DNA from: Selaginella moellendorffii
Taxonomy: Eukaryota; Plantae; Lycopodiophyta
Assembly: GCF_000143415.4 (NCBI RefSeq)
Contig: NW_003314304.1
Location: 1,594,730 to 1,658,729 of the forward strand
Length of the DNA stretch: 64,000 nt
Direction of reading: 5' to 3'
Shown here: positions 9,330 through 61,309 of the stretch, in pieces
How positions within the stretch are numbered: the stretch's first letter is position 1
Layout: every line of letters starts with the position of its first letter
The notes under the pieces: generated by a model
The model's database searches: none
Seen by the model: the letters and a program-made list of their open reading frames with translations, nothing else
What the model was told of the DNA's origin: nothing
Translations under genes and position numbers: made by a program

Positions 9330-10350
9330 ATAGAGGACATTTGATTTATCATTGCCTTGCCAAATAGTCTCAAAAATCAATATAATTAATGATTTATTTT
9401 AAATACCCTACATAGTCTTTGTTAAATAAAACTAAAATCATAGATATATTTCAATGTAAAATACCTTTGTAAATCCATATTGTTTTATAATCCAAGGTTA
9501 TAAGATGGATATTAAAATATTTGGTCATGATTGTCTTTTGGTCAATTTCTTTCACAATTTTAGTTTTCATATCGAAATGTCATTAATATGAAATCATTTG
9601 ATGAGTTTTTCCTTCACTTTGATTATTAAAAATTCAACACTGAAATAAACTTGAAACATTAGAATAAACATGAAATAATATTTTAAAGCAATAATGTAAA
9701 CTTACTTCATCAACTTTTCTTACAAAATATAGCCCAATCATTCCAAAGACATATAGTAATAATTATATAAAGTATGTTCATTTATCTTCATCTTTCCAAA
9801 CTACCTCGTAAAAATATATATTGATGATCTACTTTAGAATGGTGTTTGTTAGATAAAACTAAAAACTTAAATGTTAAATACCTTTGCAGATCCATATTTT
9901 TCTTTCATCCAGGATTATGGGATGAAGAGCAAAATATATAATTAATGATTTACTTTAAATGCCTTACATAGCCTCTGTTAGATAAAACTAAAAGCATGGA
10001 TATATTTCAATATAAAATACCTTTATAAATATATATTGTTTTATCATCCAAATTATGGGATAAAAAATAAAATATATGGTATCTTTTCCTTCTCTTAAAA
10101 TATTAGATATTCAACACTGAAATAAACTTGAAACATTAAAATAAACAGGAAAGAATAATTTGGAGTTATAATACATACTTACCTCATTAACTTCAGCTAC
10201 AAAATAGACCTGAATCATACCAAAGATATATAGTAATAACTATGTAAAGCATATTTATTTACCTTCGTTTTGTTAAACCACCTCATAAAAATATAGATTA
10301 ATGATCTGCTTTAGAATGGTGTTTGTTAAATAAAATAAAAAACTTAAATG
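9330..10350 (-). repeat. Degenerate tandem copies of the ROCO CDS 3' end and 3' flank
   Basis: aaatacctttg(c/t)a(g/a)a(c/t)ccatatt, the last ROCO codons (10353), recurs at ~9459, ~9876 and ~10014. Confidence 0.75.
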
Positions 10351-42200: not shown

Positions 42201-43358
42201 TATACCTATAGATGAGAAGGTGGAGCTATGGATCACCACAAGCAAGGCAAATAATTCTCAGATAACAACAAACCGTCACGTTGATCCTGTGCAATTCCAA
42301 GGATGGACTGAAAAATAAAAGAAGCAGTTCCTTACAGTCAACTTTAAATGAATGATATTTACCATCAGAATGATCCATTTCCAAATTCCCCTTAGGAAAT
42401 TCTTAAGGGCATATTCTTTTCCATTTGAAAATCATAACGGCAGCGACCACAATTACGGGAACCGATTTGATCGACCAAACACCGAAAATCTTTCTCTGGA
42501 TCGAGATTCGAGAGAAACAGCCCTCGAGCAAGGGACCACAGCGGGTGGTAGCCTTCAATTCCCTCCAGATAACAACATCTCAAACATCCCGAGCTCCAGA
42601 CCCAGCTCCTAAGCTCCAGCTGCAGCTCCCGATTCTTACGAAGTCACTGTGCCAGCGGCAGCGACCTCTCCGCCATCGCCACCGAGCTCCGCTCCATTCC
42701 CCAAAACTCCCATTGTCGATCCCAGCACCGTCCTCGATGAGCAGCCGGTGGAAGATTGGGATCGGCATGGGCGTGTTCTTGGGCTCCGTTGCCGCGGTCT
42801 TCCCGTCGCTCGTGTTTCGCGAGAGTGGAGGATCCCATTCCGGGAAGAGCTTTAGAGTTGCTAGAAAAGATTAACTCTCCGGTTCTTTGTAGTCTTCTCC
42901 TGTATCATCGTTTGTGTTGAGCCTCGTCTAGGCAATCACGACACTCTCGAATTGCCAACCTGGGATCAAGAAAACAAACAGTCCACTGACTCCAGCGAAC
43001 TTAAAATCAACTTACAATCGCCAGTGATACGAAACAGCGTAAAAATGCGAGCTTATCTGCGTCTTGTCCTCTGGATATTGCCGAGTTCTTCTTGCTCCCA
43101 GGTCTCTGTTTGTTCCTTCCAGCGAAAGGTACGATTTTTCGCTGGAAAGAACAGCATCAAACTCCTATTGCCTGCAAAACAAAATAAGTGACAGACAAAA
43201 TGAGTGACGAGACGCCATTTTCGATTCGTACCGTCTGTGGATCCTCAACAACTGCTCGGACAAAAATCCTTCATCACAAAAGGCACTCCACCTTTCCTGC
43301 CAATGGAGCTTAGCTTTACATAAAACTCACCATAACTTTATTGTCGATGAAACTCTCA

Positions 43359-45147
43359 TCAGCCAAACAGGGAACCAACAACACCACCGACGACTTTCTC
43401 AGTGCCCTTGGTAACTCCACTAACCACAGTTCCCGTTCCGCTAACAACAGAACCCACAAGACCACCACTACCAGTGGCTGGTTTGGAAGCAGCCGAGCCA
43501 CTGATCACGCCCCTGACGTTGAAAATGGACACACCTTCGTAAACACCACCGATCTCGTCCTCCACTTTCGTGTCAATGCCGTCGAGTCGAGTAGCTTTGG
43601 TGGAGTACGTGAAGGGAACTCTGCATTTTCCCCTGGTGCACTCTACTGCCACCTTGGCCTGGAGCAAGAAAGAAAGGGAAAAGAATCAAATTGAATGAGC
43701 CTGAGGCTTGAAAACTTTCTCACCGCTCCTCCGGGAGGCTTTAATATGCTTTATTTCGTTAAAGTGGAATTTATTCAGTAAAGTGGGACATTAATTAGCA
43801 TGTGTCCACATGCCATTTCCTAGTACTTAATTAATATTTATTAATATTTCTATCAGTTTTTTAATTTATTTTTTATATTTCACAATATTATAACACAAAA
43901 TCATATGAAAAGTTTTTAATTTATAAATTATAAAGCTAAAACTTCAATTTTTTATTGCTGTTATAAAAATGGCATGTGGCCATACACCATATGTGGGATA
44001 ATGAAAAGTTCCACTTTAACGAAATAAAACATTAATGTCTTTAATGAGATAGCCGGACTGGAACGTAAGCAGGGTTCCGAGCTCGGTCTCGGTGGTTTTC
44101 TCCACCTCGACTGTGACGGTGGCTTCTACGGAGGCGATCTCGGGGATTCCAGCGCTCACGGTCAGGCTGGTTTCCAGTCCCACCGTCTGGGACGTCATCC
44201 AGCGGTTGCTCGTTGATACGGACTCGGTGAAGCTGACTTGAACCTGGAGGTCGGCGTTCTGGCCACCGTTGTTCTCAGGGGACGGATATCGGTCACCTCC
44301 GCAAGCCCGAGCAGGTACTTCACGTTGAAGATGTGCTTGTTGCTGGTTTCCTCGTAGAAGTGTGTCGCAGCGTTGTCGACATTCGTGGCGGTGGCCTTGA
44401 GCTTGTGGTCCTTGTCACTGCGGATGACAAAGAGGTCGGAGTCATCTCCGACGCAGCGGATGGTGATCATGTTCTTGCTCACTCTGGATGAAGTGGCAGA
44501 AAGGATCCTCGGGAGCGGCTTCTTTCTTTGTGTCTGCGATGATATCGTTGTCAGTGTCCCGGCGCCAGAAGAGCTTGCTGGTAACGCTCTGGAAGATAAA
44601 GTTCCCGTCCACAAGTGGCGTGGCCTGGAAAGCTCCCTCGAGCTCGCGGCTGTCCATGTTGCACCACAACGACCTATCTCCCGAAGAGGCGGATAGAAAC
44701 TTGCCGTTGTTGAACTTGAGCATTAAGAAAGTCGGGAAGTTGAGAGCAAGGCTTTCGGCGCTCTGCACTTCGGCCGGTGGGAAAACGTCGAGACGTCGAT
44801 TGTGGACTTGATAATGATCTTGTTCTTGGCATCCGGAGCTTCGACGATCTGGAAATGATAAGCTTTGTCGCTTGGATCCTTGGGCTCTTCATGGTCTGAC
44901 GGAATTGTTCCTGGCGAAGAATTGTCGTAAAATCTCCTCCAGAAGCGACCGTTTGGAGCACGGATCATCACCGTCGAATCCGAGTTGTCTTTGGAGTTGT
45001 AGAGAGCTTCATATGTTGAAAGACGGGTTCTCTCCTTGGAGGAGAAGAAGTTGAAAGGGAGGTAGTTCAAAACAGCACTCAGTATCAGGTAGTTCCCTTC
45101 GGCATTTTTCAGCGGGAAGTAGTGCGGGAGCCTTGTTGGACGTCATC
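43359..45147 (-). pseudogene. Agglutinin-aerolysin pseudogene (frameshifts, MITE insertion)
   Basis: Fragments NYLPFNFFSSKERTRL, LALNFPTFLMLK, SQTVGLETSLTVSAGIPEIAS and AKVAVECTRGKCRVPF are near-identical to 58477-60051. Confidence 0.9.
43740..44036. mobile_element. ~300-bp AT-rich MITE
   Basis: TIRs tttatttcgttaaagtggaa (~43749) and ttccactttaacgaaataaa (~44010), plus an inner inverted pair ccacatgccattt/aaatggcatgtgg; absent at the matching site (~59650) of the intact gene; both ends TTAA-like. Confidence 0.85.
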
Positions 45148-45887
45148 CCTCCTACCAAGAAAATTGTTACCGAGAGCAAAGCATAAGAGCAATGCATGGA
45201 GCAACTTACAGCTTGAAATGCAATAGGATGATGTTGTATGAAGACTAGCAGCTAAAATTTATACAGCGGCAGAAGCATCTTGTGACAAGATGGCCACAAG
45301 CGCTAGCAACAAAACGTCAATATTGGTCGTGCGTGATTCAAGAGAAGGATCGCAAAGAAAAAACACAGCATCGTACCGTCAACTTTAGATGAATGATACA
45401 TAACACCTTCTTTGAGTATTAAATTCCCTCAAGGGTCATCCTCTACAGATACACACTGTAAGAACATCATAAACACGTGCTTACTTGGTCGAGCTCTCAA
45501 CGGTTCTGCCATCTATCTTGGTAGCTTCACAGTTTCTCGGATCATAACCAGGTTGATCTGCTATTGGATTCTTGTCTAGCACCAGCAAATCTGCGTAAGC
45601 TCCCTCCAATCTGACCATCCACTGCGCACAAGTACTTGTCGCAGACTTAAGAATCGCTATAGGAGACTGCACGCGTGATAGTAGAGAAAACTCCTCGAGC
45701 ACCATCACCACCAAGAGCTGGATTTGCTGGAGCAGCAACGTATGGATATTCAGATCCTTCCTTGTGGAATCCAAGCGTCTGATCGCGCAGCTTCTCACAG
45801 CGGTGCTGCTGCTCCTTGTGTTGACGATCTTGTCCAGCAGTGGAAAAACGAACCTGGTGAGCGGATAGACGCCTCCGTGATCCTTCC

Positions 45888-51629: not shown

Positions 51630-53091
<1,462 letters not shown>

Positions 53092-53308
53092 GCTAGCCAA
53101 GAACACTGTGTCGATAGTCAAATTCTTTCTTCTTGTGTGGAGTTGTGAAAGATTTTCCTCAATGCAAGCGATTGATCGATGGAATCCAAGCGATCCACGC
53201 ATGCGATGCTGCAATGCAAGTGATCAATGGATTGCAAACCTGGATTGGCAGCGACAACGATTGTGATATATTCCCGAGAAATATTCTTGCAAGAATGAGG
53301 GTTCTTTC

Positions 53309-55315
53309 ATGGTTCTTGGAAGAACATCGAATGCCGGCGTGATCGATCGCATTGCCAGCTCCTTGAAGCGATCGAAGAGCCTGTCTGAGGTGAGGCAGAT
53401 CCATCCGCGAGTGGAGCAGCAACGCAGCACCTATCTCTCCAATCGTTTGCTGGAAGCCTATGGGCGACACGATGCGGTGGAATGCGCGCAGGCACTCTTC
53501 GATTCCATGCCCGATCCAAACAATTTCTCCTGGACGTTCCTCCTCTCGGCATACGCGCGGAATGGATATTTCGATCGATCCAAGCGCGTCTTCGATGCGA
53601 TGGCGCTCAATCGCTGCCACGACGTGGTTTCCTGGACGATCTTGCTCAAAGGCTTCTCAGAGAGTGGCAGGATCGAGGAGATGGAGGAGATTTTCGCCAG
53701 GATGCCCGCGAGGAGCGTCATTTCCTTCCACACAGTGTTCGTCGCCCACAAGAACGCCAAGAACTGGGACGAGGCATCCAGAGCGTTTCTCCAGATGCCG
53801 GAGCACGATCTCATCTCGTGGACTGGCATGATCCAAAGCTACGCTGGCAGCGGGAGAATTGATCGCGCGGAGGAGATGTTTGGAAAGATCCCAGCGCGCA
53901 ACACGATGTGCTGCAACTCGATGATCTTGGCATTTGCCGACGCTGGGCATTTGGATCCAGCGAAAGCGCTGTTCGATTCGATGCCCGAGAAGAACGAGGT
54001 TTCCTGGAATGCGATGCTGGCGATCGAGAATCTTGAAATAGATGAGTTGCATCTCTACTTTGAGAGAATGCCACAGCGTAGCATCGCTTCTTGGCGAGCG
54101 ATTGTGGCAGAAAATGCCGCAAAGGGGGATCTTTTCAGGGCCAAGAACACGTTCGATCAAATGCCGGAGCATAGCGCCTCCTCTTGGAGCGCCATGATCG
54201 TCGCCTTTGCTCGCATAGGTCCAATCCACGCCGAGACGATGCTCCACAAGAGCCCTAGCTGGGATCCATCGATGTGGGGATCGTTAATCCAAGCCTATGC
54301 CGAGATGGGGCATTTGGAGATAGCGGCAAGAACCTTAGAATCGATGCCAGAGAAGAGCGCTGGACTATCGACAATTCTTGTCCGGGCATGCCAGGAGCGC
54401 GATCAAGCCGATTTGGCGAAGGCGCTGTTCGATCAAGCGCGCGATCGAGACGCGATTCTGTGGAACACGATCTTGTTCGTGCTTGCCCGGAACGGGGAAA
54501 TCCCGGCGGCCAAGAGTGTCTTTGCGAAGATGGCTCGGCACAGCGCAGTGTCGTGCACGGAGATGATCGCGGCTCTCGGTAGCGATGGCGATGTCGGGAG
54601 CGCTAGGGAGATTTTCGATTCCATGGCCGAGAAAGAAGATATTGTCGCGAGAACCGCGATGATCCATGCATACGCCCGGAACGGGGATCTAGAACAGGCC
54701 AGATCGCTCTTCGATGTGGTGGAGCTCCACAGCCGCGATGCGATCCTGTGGAACACGATGATCGCGGCGTACTCCCAGAGCGGCGATCTGGATGAGGCGA
54801 GGGAGATCTTGGAGAGAATGCCGCACAGAGATGTCATGGCCTGGACCGCGTTGATGGCGCAAGAGAACGGCGGCCAAGCGATGGCGGTGGTCGCGATCAT
54901 GCAGCTCGAGGGCGTGGCGCCGAATGGAATCTCCTTCGTGGCGGTTCTTGGCGCCTGTGGCCACGACGGATTCGTGGCAAGCGCTGGAGAGTACTTCCGA
55001 TCGATGAGGCGAGACTATGGCCTCGATCCGGCGAAAGAACACTACGGCTCGATGCTGCTGGGGCTCGGCCGGGCGGGAATGCTGGATGCCGCCGAGGAGC
55101 TCATGGAATCCATGCCATTCGAGCCAGATGCCGCGATGTGGGGGGAGATTCTCAGCGCTTGCCAGATCCACGGCGACGTCGATCGCGCCTGGAATGCCGC
55201 GCTGCGGCTTGGCGAGATGGATCCACGCGACTCCGCGACCTATGTCTCGCTGGGAAATATCTTGCTCGATCGCGAGGATTCAAATGTAGTAGGGTTCCTC
55301 CCAGCGCTGGGCTAG
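53309..55315 (+). CDS. PLS-class pentatricopeptide repeat protein with E-type C-terminus (no DYW)
   Basis: Repeated F..MP..(D/N)..SW..M motifs; EHYGSM..LGRAG.L..AEEL..SMPFEPD..W..LSAC.IHGD; intronless, 668 aa. Confidence 0.93.
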   Translation: MVLGRTSNAGVIDRIASSLKRSKSLSEVRQIHPRVEQQRSTYLSNRLLEAYGRHDAVECAQALFDSMPDPNNFSWTFLLSAYARNGYFDRSKRVFDAMALNRCHDVVSWTILLKGFSESGRIEEMEEIFARMPARSVISFHTVFVAHKNAKNWDEASRAFLQMPEHDLISWTGMIQSYAGSGRIDRAEEMFGKIPARNTMCCNSMILAFADAGHLDPAKALFDSMPEKNEVSWNAMLAIENLEIDELHLYFERMPQRSIASWRAIVAENAAKGDLFRAKNTFDQMPEHSASSWSAMIVAFARIGPIHAETMLHKSPSWDPSMWGSLIQAYAEMGHLEIAARTLESMPEKSAGLSTILVRACQERDQADLAKALFDQARDRDAILWNTILFVLARNGEIPAAKSVFAKMARHSAVSCTEMIAALGSDGDVGSAREIFDSMAEKEDIVARTAMIHAYARNGDLEQARSLFDVVELHSRDAILWNTMIAAYSQSGDLDEAREILERMPHRDVMAWTALMAQENGGQAMAVVAIMQLEGVAPNGISFVAVLGACGHDGFVASAGEYFRSMRRDYGLDPAKEHYGSMLLGLGRAGMLDAAEELMESMPFEPDAAMWGEILSACQIHGDVDRAWNAALRLGEMDPRDSATYVSLGNILLDREDSNVVGFLPALG

Positions 55316-55323
55316 GGTATTGG

Positions 55324-58113
55324 ATGGATTCCTCATTCGTGCGCGGCGACGATGCGCTGGACAGCGAGCAGCAGCAGCATCAAGGCCGGGATCCAGCTCC
55401 AGGCGACGATCAAGATCAAGATCAAGACGAGGAGAATGAAGACGACGAGGAGGAGCTCCAGAAGAAGGCCGCGCAGCAGGGATGTGATGCCGTGGTCGTG
55501 AGCGAAGAGGATTCAGGTATTCTAGACAGTAGCTTCTCCGGCAAGGATCACAGAGGCGTCGATCCGCTCACCAGGTTCGTTCTTCCGCTGCTGGACAATG
55601 ACGAGCTGGATCGTCAGCACAAGCAGCACCACCACCACCATCAAGACGATCCTGGAAGCTGTGAGAAGCTGCGCGATCAGGCGCTTGGATTCCACAAGCA
55701 AGGATCTGGATTTCCATACGTTGCTGCTCCAGCAAATCCAGCTCTTGGTAGTGCTGCTACTGCTGGAAGTGGAGGAAGGGATTGCATGGAGGGTGAACGA
55801 GTCTATCGGAAGGGGATATGGATGCTGCCAGAGCTCTTGGCTCTCCAGACCGCGAGGAAAGCTGGGATGGGAAAGTTTGGATATAGAACCAGGAACAACA
55901 AGTCGGAGAAAGAGCGATGGCAAGACATCGAGGACGTTTTGTGGCTGCAAGGCGTGCAAAGAAGTGCCGATCAGTGCCGCTCGCGCTGGGAATATATTTC
56001 CAGGGAATTCAGGAGGATCGTGGAGTATGAAACGTCGGCTCCGATGGGACAGTCGTATTGGAGTCTCTCGCAGGCTGATCGGAAGGACAAGGATCTCCCT
56101 ATCAACTTTTATGGGGACTTATTCCACGCAATGAACCAGTGGATGGGAGCTGGAAAAGGAGCACCTATGGAGGGAGCAGCCAAGGCAATGGAAACTGGAA
56201 GTGCTACTAGCAATGGTGAAGATCTTTTTTCTTTCTTATTTTTTGGTTTTCGTTCTTGTTTCTACTTCTACTCGACTGATTGCGTGCTGTGAATGCAGGT
56301 AATGGCTCTCGAAATTCATGCTTGCAGCTGGATAACCCCGGCAGCAAACCAGCGGGAAAGAAGAGAAAAGCTGCATATAAGCAGAACAATAGGTACTTAA
56401 GTTTGATCTTCTATCTGTCCTGTTTGTGACTCTCGTATCCAGGTCCTTGTGGCCGAGAGAAATCCAGCTTCAACCAGAGGCAGGAACTCTCCTGCTATGC
56501 AACTGCAGTATCGTTCATGTCGGTGCGTCTACAAATATTACCAACGGCGATCACGTTCTCATAAGGAACAAGAGAATTGCTTATGTTGGACCTTCTCTTG
56601 CTTACTACGCTTCGCAAGTAAGAACAAGGACTTCGGTGATTATTATACATTTTTCTCTGATCACACAAGTCTTTTTTGCAGGTTTTGGATTTGGGAGGTC
56701 GGTTCCTGATACCAGGTCTTTGTGACGCTCACGTCCATGTCACGGCTATAAGCGCGAACTTGCATGATATGTCAAGTATTCCGGCTTCTCTTATCACTGC
56801 GAGGGCGACCAAGGTGTTGCAAAACATGCTGATGCGGGGTTTTACGACTGTGAGAGACGTTGGCGGCTGCGACTGGGGACTTGCAAAGGTATGTCTCCAA
56901 CTTATTCTAGCCATGCATCTCAGAGAAGCTGCATTTGGTTGTCAGGTTCATTCTATGGCCTGTTCATGTTTTTGAAAGAAGATGCTATTGCTCCAGATCT
57001 ACACGTCTTGATACCAATCATCTTCAAACAGGCAGTGGAAGAAGGAACAATTCTTGGCCCGAGGATCCTTTTTGGTGGCCATGCGCTCTCACAAACAGGA
57101 GGTCACGGAGATATGCGACTGGCGGGAGAAGACGACATTTGCTCGTGCTCGGGCTCCTTAGCCCTTGGTCGGGTATGCGATGGCGTCGCTGAAGCTCGTA
57201 AAGCTGCTCGAGATGAACTTCGAAAAGGCGCTTATCATATCAAAATCATGGCGTCTGGCGGTGTCTCTTCACCAACTGATCATCTTACTAGTTTGCAGGT
57301 AATGCTTCTCTAGTTGGTTTTGCGCACCAAATGACTTTGTTTCACAGTTTTCAGCTGAAGAAATCTCTGCCATTGTAGAAGAGGCTACGCATTGCGGCAA
57401 GTACGTATGCGCGCACGCCTACACCGCTGCAGCTGTAAAGAGAGCGCTAGAGCTTGGGGTCCGTAGCATAGAGCATGGAAACGTGAGTCCTTTTATCTTG
57501 GTTTTGCAGCGACTTAAAATCTAACTGGTTTTATGCAGCTCGCTGACACGGAATGCTTAGATTTGATGAAGGTGAAAGGTGCATTTCTAGTACCAACTCT
57601 TGTGACATACCATCAAATTCGTCGCCAGGGTGAAGCTTCCGGTATGGCCCCGGAGCTTGTTGCAAAGGTGATAGAAGGATAACTTTTCGTTCTTTCTACT
57701 TACTGGGCCTGCAGGTAGGGGACTTGCTAGAGAGAGGACTAGACGTGGTGGCACTAGCAGACCAACGAGGTGTGAATATTTGTTTTGGGACGGACTTGCT
57801 TGGTTCGATGCACGACCATCAACTCGAGGAGTTTTCTCTACGATCACGCGTGCAGTCTCCTATAGCGATTCTTAAGTCTGCGACAAGTACTTGTGCGCAG
57901 CTCTTCAACATGGATGGCCAGATTGGCTGCGTGGCAGAGGGAGCTTACGCAGATTTGCTGGTGCTAGACAAGAATCCAATAGCAGATATCGGTGTTCTAG
58001 CCGATCCCAACAATCTGGTTATGATCCTCAAGCAGGGAGAAACTGTGAAGCTGCCGAAGGGACTGGCGACCAAGATGGTAGATGGCAGACCGTGGACTCA
58101 AATTACAAGCTGA
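55324..58113 (+). CDS. Trihelix (Myb/SANT-like) domain fused to a metal-dependent amidohydrolase, ~765 aa, 8 exons
   Basis: Exons 55324-56215, 56299-56392, 56443-56617, 56682-56888, 57032-57298, 57348-57482, 57539-57667 and 57715-58113 join in frame at GT-AG sites. Trihelix: RKGIW..ELLAL..RWQDIE..RSADQCRSRWE. Amidohydrolase: PGLCDAHVH, TTVRDVGG, IKIMASGGV, AHAY, SIEHG, FGTD, ADLLVLD.NP. Confidence 0.8.
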
Positions 58114-58476
58114 GAGCTCGACCAAGTAAGCAAGTGTTTATGATGTTCTTACAGTGTGAATCTGTAGAGGATGACCTTTGAGGGAATTTACTACTCTGAG
58201 AAGGTGTTATGTATCATTCATCTAAAGTTGACGGTACGATTCTGCGTTTTTCTTTGCGATCCTTCTAGTACAACGAATATTGACGTTTTGTTGCTATTTG
58301 AGAATTATCGCCTTTTGCGCTTGTGGTTCAAGATGCTTCTGCCGCTGTATAAATATTAGCTGCGAGTCTTCATACAACATCATCCTATTGCATCGCAAGT
58401 TGTAAGTTGCTCCATGCATTGCTCTTATGCTTTGCTCTCGGTAACAATTTTCTCGGTTTGCAGATCACAAGGAGGG

Positions 58477-60051
58477 ATGACGTCCAACACCAAACCAGTG
58501 AGGCTCCCCCACTACTTCACGCTGAAGAATGCCGAAGGGAACTACCTGACACTGAGTGCTGTTTTGAACTACCTCCCTTTCAACTTCTTCTCCTCCAAGG
58601 AGAGAACCCGTCTTTCAACATATGAAGCCCTCTACAACTCCAAAGACAACTCTGATTCGACGGTGATGATCCGTGCTCCAAATGGCCGCTATTGGAGGAG
58701 ATTTTACGACAATTCCTCGCCAGGAACAATTCCGTCAGCCCATGAAGAGCCCAAGGATCCAAGCGACAAAACTTATCATTTCCAGATCGTCGAAGCTCCC
58801 GATGCCAAGAACAAGATCGTTATCAAGTCCACAATCGACGGTCTCGACGTTTTCCCAGCGGCCGAAGTGCAGAACGCCGAAAGCCTTGCTCTCAATTTCC
58901 CGACTTTCTTAATGCTCAAGGCCAACAACGGCAAGTTTCTATCCGCCTCTTCGGGAGATAAGTCGTTGCGGTGCAACATGGACAGCCGCGAGCTCGAGGG
59001 AGCTTTCCAGGCCACGCCACTTGTGGACGGGAACTTTATCTTCCAGAGCGTTACCAGCAAGCTCTTCTGGCGCCGGGACACTGACAACGATGACTGGATC
59101 ATCGCAGACACAAAGAAAGAAGCCGCTCTCGAGGATCGTTTCTGCCACTTCAACGCATCCAGAGTGAGTAAGAACATGATCACCATCCGCTGCGTCGGAT
59201 ACGACTCGGGCCTCTTTGTCCTTCGTAGCGACAACGAAAACAAGCTCAAGGCCGTCTCCTCGAGCGTCGACAACGCCGCGACACACTTCACCGTCTATGA
59301 TGGAACCAGCAACAAGCACATCTTCAACGTGAAGTACCTTCTCGGGCTTGCGGAGGTGACCGATATCCGTCCTCTGGTCGTCGGCCAAGGCTCGGTGGTG
59401 AACAACGGTGGCCAGAACGCCGACCTCCAGGTTCAAGTCAGCTTCACCGAGTCCGTATCAACGAGCAACCGCTGGATGACGTCCCAGACGGTGGGACTGG
59501 AAACCAGCCTGACCGTGAGCGCTGGAATCCCCGAGATCGCCTCCGTAGAAGCCACCGTCACAGTCGGGGTGGAGAAAACCACCGAGACCGAGCTCGGAAA
59601 GGAGATGACCAACCTGCTTACATTCCAGTCTGGCTATCTCATCAAAGACGTGCCTCCCGGAGGAGAGGTGAGAAAGTTTTCAAGCCTTGGGGTCATTCAA
59701 TTTGATTCTTTTACCTTTTCTTTCTTGCTCCAGGCCAAGGTGGCAGTGGAGTGTACCAGGGGAAAATGCAGAGTTCCCTTCACGTACTCCACCAAAGCTA
59801 CTCGACTCGACGGCATTGACACGAAAGTGGAGGACGAGATCGGTGGTGTTTACGAAGGTGTGTCCATTTTCAACGTCAGGGGCGTGATCAGTGGCTCGGC
59901 TCCTTCCAAACCAGCCGCTACTTCCAAACCAGCTACTGGTAGTGGTGGTCTTGTGGGTTCTGTTGTTAGCGGAACGGGAACTGTGGTTAGTGGAGTTACC
60001 AAGGGCACTGAGAAAGTCGTGGGTGGTGTTGTTGGTTCCCTGTTTGGCTGA
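58477..60051 (+). CDS. Agglutinin (amaranthin-like beta-trefoil x2) + aerolysin/natterin-type pore-forming protein
   Basis: VMIRAPNGRYWRR and KLFWRR..DWIIAD trefoil motifs; S/T-alternating hairpin SQTVGLETSLTVSAGIPEIASVEATVTVGVEKTT; CRVPFTY..GGVYEGV; 66-nt intron 59668-59733; TATA ~58348; no signal peptide from ATG 58477. Confidence 0.85.
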   Translation: MTSNTKPVRLPHYFTLKNAEGNYLTLSAVLNYLPFNFFSSKERTRLSTYEALYNSKDNSDSTVMIRAPNGRYWRRFYDNSSPGTIPSAHEEPKDPSDKTYHFQIVEAPDAKNKIVIKSTIDGLDVFPAAEVQNAESLALNFPTFLMLKANNGKFLSASSGDKSLRCNMDSRELEGAFQATPLVDGNFIFQSVTSKLFWRRDTDNDDWIIADTKKEAALEDRFCHFNASRVSKNMITIRCVGYDSGLFVLRSDNENKLKAVSSSVDNAATHFTVYDGTSNKHIFNVKYLLGLAEVTDIRPLVVGQGSVVNNGGQNADLQVQVSFTESVSTSNRWMTSQTVGLETSLTVSAGIPEIASVEATVTVGVEKTTETELGKEMTNLLTFQSGYLIKDVPPGGEVRKFSSLGVIQFDSFTFSFLLQAKVAVECTRGKCRVPFTYSTKATRLDGIDTKVEDEIGGVYEGVSIFNVRGVISGSAPSKPAATSKPATGSGGLVGSVVSGTGTVVSGVTKGTEKVVGGVVGSLFG

Positions 60052-60289
60052 TGAGAGTTTCATCGACTAAAAAATTATGGTGAGTTTTATGTAAAGCTAA
60101 GCTCCATTGGCAGGAAAGGTGGAGTGCCTTTTGTGATGAAGGATATTTGTCCGAGGAGTTGTTGAGGATCCACAGACGGTACGAATCGAAAATGGCGTCT
60201 CGTCACTCATTTTGTCTGTCGCTTATTTTGTTTTGCAGGCAATAGGAGTTTGATGCTGTTCTTTCCAGCGAAAAATCGTACCTTTCGCT

Positions 60290-60860: not shown

Positions 60861-61309
60861 TGTCCCTTGCTCGAGTGTTGTTTCTCTCGAATCTCGATCC
60901 AGAGAAAGACTTTCGGTGTTTGATCCATCAAATCGGTTGGAACATGGTACACAGGGCGCTCCCTGGCGCCCTCACATCCAGCACGTATGGATTCTTGCGG
61001 GTGGATTCGCACAAGAAATCTTCGTCCGAGGAAGCAGCGGCTGTGGCGGACGATCCGGTTGAACGAGGATGAAAAAGAATATACTCTTTAAGAATTTACT
61101 AAGGGGAATTTGAGAATGGAAATACTGTGATCATTTTGATAGTATGATATCAATATCATTCATTTAAAGCTGACTGTAAGGAACTGCTTTTTTTCTTTTC
61201 AGTCCGTCCTTAGAATCGCGCAGGATCAATGTGATGGTTTGTTGTTATCTGAGAATTATTTGCCTTGCTTGTGGCGATCCGTAGCTCCACCTTCTCAATA
61301 AGATATGGA

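What the first reader, a model, noticed from the sequence alone, without database searches (positions are those of the whole stretch)
55324..58113. Trihelix DNA-binding domain fused to a bacterial-type amidohydrolase
Seen: eight GT-AG exons join in one 2298-nt frame with matching phases. The order is an acidic/His-rich N-terminus, a trihelix/SANT domain, a linker with NLS-like GKKRK, and a complete amidohydrolase with metal ligands (HxH, K, H, H, D). The enzyme part has no in-frame ATG ahead of its HxH motif, so fusion is the simplest model. Known: the motifs (GHALSQTGGHGD, KIMASGGVSSPTD, AHAYT, SIEHGN) resemble bacterial Xaa-Pro dipeptidase/carboxypeptidase-like amidohydrolases, and plant trihelix-enzyme fusions are known with a uridylate-kinase-like domain and RNase J. 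I do not know this combination. Inference: a metabolite-sensing or catalytic nuclear regulator, with the enzyme possibly horizontally acquired or lost in seed plants.
Basis: partly seen in the sequence, partly recalled or inferred. Interest (0 to 1): 0.8.

Follow-up and report, generated by a model that had tools for sequence, protein, structure and literature searches.

The report
Lycophyte trihelix–amidohydrolase fusion gene
A spikemoss (Selaginella moellendorffii) gene really does join a plant DNA-binding (trihelix) domain to a complete metal-dependent peptide-bond hydrolase in one spliced message, and a clubmoss genome has the same layout, so the fusion is probably old, but what it does is untested.

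Summary
Eight GT-AG exons (55324-58113) splice into a 2298-nt frame. Its 765-aa product is identical to RefSeq XP_002980044.2, "uncharacterized protein LOC9647038 isoform X2", of Selaginella moellendorffii. Transcriptome contigs from four runs in four studies carry all seven junctions, and one contig spans the whole coding sequence. Introns 1-3 have no coverage, so there is no sign of a separate enzyme transcript.

The protein has an acidic/His-rich N-terminus, a trihelix domain (Pfam PF13837, three conserved Trp), a GKKRK linker, and a full M38/cog1228 amidohydrolase. The enzyme part is closest to the prolidase Sgx9260c (E 6e-105) and keeps every metal ligand.

New here: the Diphasiastrum complanatum locus has the same eight-exon layout with the same intron phases. 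Identity is 61% in the trihelix and 74% in the enzyme. Only the enzyme half is annotated there. The fusion therefore probably predates the Selaginella-clubmoss split.

Orthologues in ferns, mosses, Ginkgo and green algae are enzyme-only. The enzyme tree follows the species tree, so the enzyme was inherited vertically, not gained by recent transfer.

Function is inferred: a nuclear, DNA-tethered, probably oligomeric active hydrolase, possibly metabolite-responsive. No paper describes it. This scan noted other trihelix-enzyme fusions elsewhere in this genome.

The parts
55324..56215 (+). Exon 1 (aa 1-297 plus 1 nt, phase 1). It holds the acidic/His-rich, poorly conserved N-terminus (aa 1-157) and the trihelix domain with its conserved C-terminal extension.
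   Evidence: Model; Pfam PF13837; composition is 34 D+E and 9 H in the first 150 aa.
55804..56151 (+). Trihelix (Myb_DNA-bind_4) DNA-binding domain plus extension, aa 161-276, with W166, W199 and W222.
   Evidence: PF13837 scores 40.7 bits against a cut-off of 27. It aligns to the Arabidopsis GT-1 DNA-binding domain 2EBI/2JMW at E 3.6e-4. It is 61% identical to the Diphasiastrum counterpart.
56216..56298 (+). Intron 1 (83 nt, GT..AG). If retained, the frame stops at 56292 and gives a trihelix-only product.
   Evidence: The joint is in all four runs, and depth in that bin falls exactly by the intron's share, so no contig covers it.
56299..56392 (+). Exon 2: the linker, with the basic NLS-like GKKRK at 56355-56369 (aa 317-321).
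   Evidence: Diphasiastrum exon 2 has GKKRR and the same intron phases.
56443..56617 (+). Exon 3: start of the amidohydrolase (N-terminal beta-sandwich strands). It has no in-frame ATG.
   Evidence: It aligns to the N-termini of the standalone orthologues and to 3FEQ from residue 25.
56682..56888 (+). Exon 4: the HxH metal ligands (H404, H406).
   Evidence: Pfam and NCBIfam matches to the pieces; alignment to 3FEQ.
56889..57031 (+). Intron 4 (143 nt). An alternative acceptor makes exon 5 begin at 56946, which gives a stop nine codons later.
   Evidence: The joint 56886>56944 (a 57-nt skip) is in 3 of 4 runs alongside the 143-nt skip; translation.
57032..57298 (+). Exon 5: GGHGD (H481, the oxyanion-hole His of the family) and KIMASGG (K527, the carboxylated bridging Lys of the family).
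   Evidence: residue roles come from PMC10699109 and PMC11511702.
57348..57482 (+). Exon 6: AHAYT (H568, Y570) and IEHGN (H588).
57539..57667 (+). Exon 7: barrel segment between the His ligands and the Asp ligand.
57715..58113 (+). Exon 8: FGTDL (D660), the C-terminal beta-sandwich and the stop codon.
45134..45885 (-). Decayed remnant of a second copy of this gene. A piece of exon 1 (matching 55543-55756) is joined directly to the end of exon 8 plus the 3'UTR (matching 57823-58489), at about 78% identity, with about 2 kb deleted internally.
   Evidence: tblastn and blastn against the window. It lies beside a 90-93% identical copy of the downstream gene.

Best explanation
LOC9647038 is a genuine single gene of Selaginella moellendorffii. 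Its mRNA encodes one 765-aa polypeptide with four parts: an acidic, probably disordered N-terminus, a GT-1-like trihelix DNA-binding domain, a short basic linker, and a complete binuclear-metal amidohydrolase of the M38/cog1228 prolidase group. The enzyme half is the ordinary green-plant copy of this enzyme, inherited vertically. An ancestor of lycophytes probably joined a trihelix-coding exon and a linker exon to its 5' end, and both halves have been kept under constraint since. Most likely working (inferred): the basic linker sends the protein to the nucleus. The trihelix domains bind GT-type DNA elements. The enzyme core stays catalytically active on Xaa-Pro or N-acyl-amino-acid-type amides, and by analogy with its octameric bacterial relatives it assembles the protein into an oligomer carrying several DNA-binding domains. 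This places an amide-hydrolysing activity on chromatin, and substrate occupancy could modulate DNA binding or transcriptional output, as in PutA, BirA and NadR. Shown: gene structure, single transcript, domain identity, intact catalytic residues, the matching Diphasiastrum layout, and vertical descent of the enzyme. Inferred: nuclear localisation, DNA binding, catalysis, oligomerisation and any coupling between them.
For: Structure and transcript:
- The spliced ORF is identical to XP_002980044.2.
- All seven junctions are in contigs of four runs from four studies. One contig spans 55311-58401, and depth over introns 1-3 drops exactly by intron length.

Domains:
- PF13837 and PF01979 both score above their gathering cut-offs.
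- The trihelix aligns to GT-1 (2EBI) with three Trp conserved.
- The enzyme aligns end to end with Sgx9260c (3FEQ/3N2C) at E 6e-105 and Sgx9260b (3MKV) at 7e-97. H404, H406, K527, H568, H588, D660, H481 and Y570 are all kept.
- Those bacterial enzymes are octameric Xaa-Pro/N-acyl-proline hydrolases (PMC11511702).

Conservation:
- Diphasiastrum locus L001 has the same eight exons. Intron phases match and exons 3, 5, 6 and 7 have identical lengths.
- Identity is 61% in the trihelix, 74% in the enzyme, but only 26% in the N-terminus and 36% in the linker. GKKRR is kept.
- In the enzyme tree the lycophytes pair (97*), and their branch lengths (0.21) match those of the enzyme-only ferns.
- 8 of 12 coding SNPs across the runs are synonymous, against 34% expected.
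- I saw no other Selaginella paralogue among the best hits, so this appears to be the species' only copy of the enzyme.
Against: - There are no protein-level data, so cleavage into two proteins after translation is not excluded.
- The runs are assembled contigs labelled only as presumed RNA. They cannot show transcription starts or rare isoforms.
- In three of four runs an alternative acceptor in intron 4 gives a premature stop, so part of the message may not encode the full fusion.
- The Diphasiastrum fusion is inferred from DNA alone. It carries a one-base frame break in exon 4 (a G6 run) and uses a GC donor in intron 2.
- Nothing tests DNA binding, catalysis, localisation or coupling.
- The score against the Caulobacter Xaa-Pro dipeptidase equivalog (245.8 bits) is far below its cut-off of 500, so the substrate is uncertain.
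Confidence: 0.75

Rival explanations
1. These are two genes wrongly joined: a trihelix gene ending at the 56292 stop inside intron 1, and an independent amidohydrolase gene with its own promoter.
For: The original JGI models were enzyme-only partials (EFJ18914.1, 380 aa). Retaining intron 1 would give a trihelix-only ORF. The 3' contigs have higher mean depth than the 5' contigs in two runs.
Against: The 5' contig of each of the four runs joins exon 1 to exons 2-4. No contig covers introns 1-3. One contig spans the whole CDS. The enzyme has no in-frame ATG before the HxH motif. The same exon phases recur in Diphasiastrum. The short models from the second scaffold are cut by the scaffold end.
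Confidence: 0.04
2. The fusion is real but one half is a passenger. Either the protein is just the plant's ordinary amidohydrolase carrying an inert trihelix, or it is a trihelix regulator whose enzyme domain is a catalytically dead scaffold or sensor.
For: No functional data exist. All other green-plant orthologues work without a trihelix. Many domain fusions are selectively near-neutral.
Against: The trihelix is 61% identical between the two lycophyte lineages, while the flanking N-terminus (26%) and linker (36%) have drifted. All three Trp and the helix-3 pattern shared with GT-1 are kept. All catalytic residues are kept and the enzyme's branch length is not inflated. This appears to be the only copy of the enzyme in the genome.
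Confidence: 0.15
3. The trihelix exon is part of a mobile or recently shuffled cassette, for example one derived from a Harbinger-type transposon's Myb-like protein. On this view the cassette has been pasted in front of several S. moellendorffii enzyme genes, and this gene is one of a recent burst.
For: Earlier notes of this scan list trihelix fusions to isocyanide hydratase, beta-ureidopropionase, NMNAT and an AAA+ ATPase in the same genome, plus a Harbinger-associated trihelix. I did not check these notes.
Against: The same fusion layout exists in Diphasiastrum, so it is old rather than recent. Searching the N-terminal 335 aa among proteins of 421-1339 aa found only the protein itself, so the other fusions do not carry a close copy of this trihelix. 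Pfam assigns it to PF13837, not to the Harbinger-associated PF12776. tblastn found no other trihelix-like hit and no second intact copy in the window.
Confidence: 0.05

Closest known systems
Sgx9260c (PDB 3FEQ/3N2C) and Sgx9260b (PDB 3MKV), cog1228 / MEROPS M38 prolidases of the amidohydrolase superfamily
   Same: The alignment is end to end (E 6e-105 and 7e-97), roughly 55% identity by eye. It keeps the HxH, carboxylated Lys, His, His and Asp ligands, the oxyanion His in GGHGD and the carboxylate-binding Tyr in AHAYT (PMC10699109, PMC11511702).
   Different: These are standalone bacterial enzymes of about 425 aa with no DNA-binding domain. Their substrates (Xaa-Pro, N-acyl-Pro) have not been shown for the plant protein.
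Standalone green-lineage orthologues (Adiantum MCO5567063.1, Psilotum, Ceratodon, Sphagnum, Physcomitrium, Ginkgo Gb_25396, Spirogloea, Closterium, chlorophytes)
   Same: They share 53-68% identity with the enzyme half and the intron positions match. The tree follows the species tree.
   Different: They are 420-500 aa with a short N-terminus and their own ATG. They have no PF13837 domain. The Adiantum, Ceratodon and Sphagnum loci have no trihelix within 10 kb upstream.
Arabidopsis GT-1 and the plant trihelix (GT-factor) family
   Same: The domain hits PF13837, has the three spaced Trp residues, and its helix-3 region aligns with that of GT-1, sharing the RS..., C, W and EF positions.
   Different: Canonical trihelix factors carry no enzyme domain. 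I did not assign this one to a trihelix clade.
   Same: A GT-type domain sits in one polypeptide with an enzyme.
   Different: The enzymes and the domain order differ. These examples rest on memory and were not checked here.
Bacterial enzyme-regulators PutA, BirA and NadR
   Same: A DNA-binding domain and an active enzyme share one chain, so substrate state can set transcription. This is the working analogy for the coupling.
   Different: There is no homology, and they are prokaryotic. Coupling is unproven for the lycophyte protein.

Membership tests
Trihelix / Myb_DNA-bind_4 (PF13837) DNA-binding domain | Profile match above Pfam's gathering score | tested here: met
   40.7 bits against a cut-off of 27, aa 166-240. 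The Diphasiastrum exon 1 scores 33.9 bits.
Trihelix / Myb_DNA-bind_4 (PF13837) DNA-binding domain | Three regularly spaced conserved aromatic residues (W-W-W in GT-1-type domains), one per helix | tested here: met
   W166, W199 and W222 align with the GT-1 tryptophans in 2EBI and are conserved in Diphasiastrum.
Trihelix / Myb_DNA-bind_4 (PF13837) DNA-binding domain | Sequence-specific binding to GT elements, and nuclear localisation | not testable with these tools
   I saw only a conserved basic GKKRK/GKKRR motif.
Amidohydrolase superfamily, cog1228 / M38 prolidase subgroup (Sgx9260c/b) | Full-length homology to the (beta/alpha)8 barrel plus beta-sandwich | tested here: met
   PF01979 covers profile positions 1-345 of 345 at 159.6 bits. 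3FEQ matches at E 6e-105 over residues 25-409.
Amidohydrolase superfamily, cog1228 / M38 prolidase subgroup (Sgx9260c/b) | Binuclear metal ligands: HxH, carboxylated Lys, His, His, Asp | tested here: met
   H404/H406, K527, H568, H588 and D660 all align with identical residues of 3FEQ and 3MKV.
Amidohydrolase superfamily, cog1228 / M38 prolidase subgroup (Sgx9260c/b) | Oxyanion-hole His and alpha-carboxylate-binding Tyr | tested here: met
   H481 (GGHGD) and Y570 (AHAYT) are conserved. Their roles are as stated in PMC10699109.
Amidohydrolase superfamily, cog1228 / M38 prolidase subgroup (Sgx9260c/b) | Hydrolysis of Xaa-Pro dipeptides or N-acyl-prolines; octameric assembly | not testable with these tools
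   Known for the bacterial enzymes only (PMC11511702).
NCBIfam NF051886 Xaa-Pro dipeptidase (Caulobacter type, equivalog) | Whole-protein score at or above the curated cut-off (500 bits) | tested here: not met
   245.8 bits. It is a relative, not a member of this equivalog.
Single-chain enzyme-transcription regulators (PutA/BirA/NadR-like logic) | DNA-binding domain and catalytically competent enzyme in one translated chain | tested here: met
   One ORF and one spliced transcript. Both domains are intact.
Single-chain enzyme-transcription regulators (PutA/BirA/NadR-like logic) | Ligand- or turnover-dependent change in DNA binding or transcription | not testable with these tools
   No data.

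The most novel reading that the evidence does not exclude
Lycophytes have kept, for roughly the whole age of the group, a set of transcription regulators in which a trihelix DNA-binding domain is wired directly to a metabolic enzyme: this amidohydrolase, plus the isocyanide hydratase, beta-ureidopropionase and NMNAT fusions noted elsewhere in this genome. That would be a eukaryotic counterpart of bacterial one-component enzyme-regulators. In this case an Xaa-Pro or N-acyl-amino-acid pool would gate transcription through an oligomeric enzyme core displaying several DNA-binding domains.
Probability: 0.2. Interest if true: 0.85.

Novelty: new variant of a known kind. Interest (0 to 1): 0.62.

Why it matters
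Fusions of an enzyme to a transcription factor are common in bacteria but rare and poorly understood in plants. This fusion is transcribed and has both halves intact. It appears to be the species' only copy of an otherwise standalone green-plant enzyme. A clubmoss genome has the same layout, and by established timetrees that lineage split from Selaginella around 400 million years ago. Together these points argue for a selected function rather than an annotation accident. The hypotheses are directly testable: nuclear localisation, binding to GT elements, dipeptidase or N-acyl-amino-acid hydrolase activity, and ligand-dependent DNA binding. The gene may also belong to a wider lycophyte habit of attaching trihelix domains to enzymes. 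Finally, the result corrects the Diphasiastrum annotation, which records only the enzyme's C-terminal 319 aa.

Tried and rejected
1. Horizontal transfer of the enzyme into Selaginella. Rejected, because the enzyme tree of 37 sequences follows the green-plant species tree.
2. Fusion by read-through of neighbouring genes that are also adjacent in other plants. No trihelix lies within 10 kb upstream in the Adiantum, Ceratodon or Sphagnum loci. Fern introns are very large, so 10 kb is a weak bound for Adiantum. However, the transcript-derived Psilotum protein has its own start.
3. A second, trihelix-less allele (XP_002993981.2, 349 aa). That scaffold simply starts inside the gene. The look-up of encoding contigs had no record for the 349-aa model.
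4. Close paralogues of the N-terminal half. Searching aa 1-335 found only the protein itself among proteins of 421-1339 aa. Shorter standalone trihelix proteins were outside that length window, and I had no protein searches left for them.
5. The big representative search with exon 8 returned no fusion-length hit with a C-terminal match. It did not list the Selaginella protein itself, so it says little about fusions hidden inside clusters.
6. ESM Atlas look-alikes of the trihelix gave only generic PF13837 clusters scoring below 0.9, so no clade could be assigned.
7. The earlier-findings look-ups by place and by sequence were blank.
8. The Xiang et al. 2010 paper (PMC2914802) is not held. Enzyme properties are cited from two later open papers instead.
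9. I did not run structure prediction. At about 55% identity to solved structures it would add little, and the tool returns no inter-domain confidence.
Full report
**Observation**

Eight exons give 2298 nt and a 765-aa ORF. They are 55324-56215, 56299-56392, 56443-56617, 56682-56888, 57032-57298, 57348-57482, 57539-57667 and 57715-58113. All seven introns are GT..AG and 47-143 nt long.

The translation is identical, residue for residue, to P0201. That is RefSeq XP_002980044.2, "uncharacterized protein LOC9647038 isoform X2" of Selaginella moellendorffii. NCBI's pipeline has therefore already predicted the fusion, but nobody has named or studied it. Three literature searches found nothing: trihelix with amidohydrolase, the locus and protein identifiers, and trihelix with Selaginella and domain fusion. 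The older JGI models (EFJ18914.1, 380 aa) cover only the enzyme. Isoform X1 (769 aa) differs by four residues from an acceptor 12 nt upstream of exon 4.

**Transcript evidence**

The look-up of sequencing runs returned 15 runs holding 65-74% of the sampled words. That is about the exonic share of the stretch. I laid contigs from four runs of four studies on 53000-58600.
- All seven junctions are present. Six are in all four runs, and the intron-7 joint is missing only where an X5 contig breaks.
- The 5' contig of each of the four runs joins exon 1 to exons 2, 3 and 4.
- In X10 a single 2744-nt contig runs from 55311 to 58401, which is the whole CDS.
- Depth in the bins holding introns 1, 2 and 3 falls exactly by the intron's share of the bin (for example 39.8 to 22.2). 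No contig covers those introns, so there is no sign of an internal start or of the trihelix-only read-through form.

There are caveats. These are assembled contigs labelled only as presumed RNA, and the splice joints themselves are what show cDNA. Contigs cannot show transcription starts or rare forms.

A second acceptor in intron 4 makes exon 5 begin at 56946. It appears in three runs and gives a stop nine codons later. Part of the message may therefore encode a 465-aa trihelix-plus-stub product or be degraded.

**Domains**

Pfam on the whole protein gives Myb_DNA-bind_4 at aa 166-240 (40.7 bits, cut-off 27) and Amidohydro_1 across its full profile at aa 395-744 (159.6 bits).

The trihelix part aligns to the Arabidopsis GT-1 DNA-binding domain (2EBI/2JMW, E 3.6e-4). 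The three tryptophans (W166, W199, W222) are in place, and so are the RS, C, W and EF positions of helix 3.

The enzyme part aligns end to end with two solved prolidases, Sgx9260c (3FEQ/3N2C, E 6e-105) and Sgx9260b (3MKV, E 7e-97). It keeps H404/H406, K527, H568, H588 and D660, plus H481 and Y570. In that family these are the metal ligands, the carbamylated bridging lysine, the oxyanion-hole histidine and the carboxylate-binding tyrosine (PMC10699109, PMC11511702). The bacterial enzymes hydrolyse Xaa-Pro dipeptides and N-acyl-prolines and are octamers.

The protein scores 245.8 bits against NCBIfam's Caulobacter Xaa-Pro dipeptidase equivalog, well below the 500-bit cut-off. It is a relative of these enzymes, and its substrate is unproven.

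**Where the enzyme comes from**

The nearest relatives of the enzyme half are standalone proteins of 420-500 aa at 53-68% identity. They come from:
- ferns (Adiantum, Psilotum)
- mosses (Ceratodon, Sphagnum, Physcomitrium)
- Ginkgo
- charophytes (Spirogloea, Closterium, Klebsormidium)
- many chlorophytes

A 37-sequence tree recovers lycophytes (97*), vascular plants (95*), streptophytes (96*) and the green lineage against prokaryotes (95*); only Cymbomonas falls among the bacteria. The lycophyte branches (0.21) are no longer than the fern branches. I left out unnamed metagenomic and Logan hits and used named sequences only. Intron positions are shared with the fern and moss genes.

The enzyme is therefore an old, vertically inherited green-plant gene, not a recent bacterial acquisition. 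It is not lost from all seed plants either. No angiosperm appeared among the best 120 hits, but that is not an exhaustive test.

**How old the fusion is**

Among the best 120 hits of two searches, only the Selaginella protein carries PF13837.

However, the Diphasiastrum complanatum locus (L001, CM055097.1) is annotated with only a 319-aa C-terminal enzyme fragment. It shows a tblastn hit to the trihelix, aa 150-280 of P0201, at 58% identity and E 1e-48. The hit is on the same strand, about 1.4 kb upstream of the exon-3 equivalent. I built the model there. It has eight exons with these properties:
- The intron phases match Selaginella (phase 1 after exon 1, phase 2 after exon 2).
- Exons 3, 5, 6 and 7 have identical lengths.
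- The exon-2 linker carries GKKRR.
- Intron 2 uses a consensus GC donor.
- There is no in-frame Met at the start of the enzyme.

The model has one defect. Exon 4 has six Gs where five would keep the frame. This may be a homopolymer error or a real lesion, so I read it with X at the break.

Identity to the Selaginella protein is 26% in the N-terminus, 61% in the trihelix plus its extension, 36% in the linker and 74% in the enzyme. Pfam also calls PF13837 in the Diphasiastrum exon 1. Fern and moss loci have no trihelix within 10 kb upstream, and their proteins start with their own Met just before the enzyme.

The most economical reading is that the fusion arose in a lycophyte ancestor. By established timetrees the Selaginella-clubmoss split is around 400 million years old. 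Both domains have been conserved since, while the spacers drifted. Within S. moellendorffii, 8 of 12 coding differences among the four runs are synonymous against 34% expected (binomial p about 0.02).

**Mechanism**

Shown: one gene, one spliced message, an intact trihelix, an intact catalytic site, a conserved basic motif, and apparently the only copy of this enzyme in the genome.

Inferred:
- The basic linker targets the protein to the nucleus.
- The trihelix binds GT-type DNA elements.
- The enzyme remains an active hydrolase of Xaa-Pro or N-acyl-amino-acid-type amides.
- If it oligomerises like its octameric relatives, it presents several DNA-binding domains at once.

On this view an amidase activity sits on chromatin, and substrate occupancy could influence transcription, as in PutA, BirA or NadR. 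I put about 0.95 on the fusion being real, about 0.75 on both halves being functional in one protein, and about 0.2-0.35 on true metabolite-gated regulation.

**Rivals**
- Mis-joined genes: about 0.04.
- One half is a passenger: about 0.15. This is weakened by the domain-specific conservation and the intact active site.
- A recently shuffled or transposon-borne trihelix cassette: about 0.05. This is weakened by the Diphasiastrum locus, by the lack of any close paralogue of the N-terminal half, and by assignment to PF13837 rather than the Harbinger-type PF12776.

**Context from this scan**

Earlier notes, which I did not check, list trihelix fusions to isocyanide hydratase, beta-ureidopropionase, NMNAT and an AAA+ ATPase elsewhere in this genome. 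If those hold, this gene is one of a series, which raises the interest. One search suggests that their trihelix domains are not close copies of this one.

**Verdict**

The fusion is real. The enzyme was not horizontally acquired. The regulator function is untested. The gene model is already in RefSeq, but I found no description of the architecture. Its presence in the Diphasiastrum locus, where only the enzyme half is annotated, seems not to have been noticed before. I rate it a new variant of a known kind, with interest 0.62.

Noticed in passing
window 43310-45885 (- strand): This is an inverted segmental duplicate. A copy of the downstream gene (matching 58401-60100) lies at 45210-43310 at 90-93% identity. 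Beside it is a 78%-identical remnant of the fusion gene in which exon 1 sequence is joined straight to the end of exon 8, with about 2 kb deleted. The duplicated block therefore carried both halves of the fusion, and only one intact copy survives.
   Followed up: partly
window 53309-55324: An intronless 668-aa PPR ORF ends at 55315, only 8 nt before the fusion gene's ATG at 55324. Contigs of two runs (X1 from 54290, X5 from 54598) run without a break from the PPR coding region into exon 1. Contigs of the other two runs start at 55311 and 55336. The transcripts may overlap, the 5'UTR may lie inside the PPR gene, or the two may be co-transcribed; contigs cannot tell.
   Followed up: partly
window 56889-57031: An alternative acceptor in intron 4 makes exon 5 begin at 56946. 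It is seen in 3 of 4 runs at contig depths comparable with the main form. It gives a stop nine codons later and a 465-aa product holding the trihelix, the NLS-like motif and a stub of the enzyme. This may be a regulated enzyme-less isoform or an NMD target.
   Followed up: partly
window 58114-58478: Contigs in two runs continue from exon 8 through the stop and 3'UTR to 58401. They then splice (GT..AG, 62 nt) to 58464, just before the downstream gene's likely ATG near 58478. That gene's ORF runs to 60051, and its counterpart on the other haplotype has a faint Agglutinin PF07468 hit. The 3'UTR of one gene overlaps the intron-containing 5'UTR of the next, or there is read-through.
   Followed up: no
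L001:5056-13775 (Diphasiastrum complanatum CM055097.1): The public annotation records only a 319-aa enzyme fragment starting just after a six-G run at 10006-10011. The full locus supports a 977-aa trihelix-amidohydrolase model if that run is really five Gs.
   Followed up: yes
L005 (S. moellendorffii GL377742.1, second haplotype scaffold): The allelic copy begins 6 nt from the scaffold end. The 349-aa and 364-aa models, one of them named 'YJL213W', are truncations caused by the assembly, not a trihelix-less allele.
   Followed up: yes
window 55748: One run (X3) carries an in-frame 12-nt insertion after 55748, in the low-complexity stretch just before the trihelix. This is length variation in the poorly conserved N-terminus.
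   Followed up: no
window 58212-58327, 42235-42357, 61154-61274: A short repeat of about 120 nt at about 70% identity occurs three times, once in the fusion gene's 3'UTR. It may be a small dispersed element.
   Followed up: no
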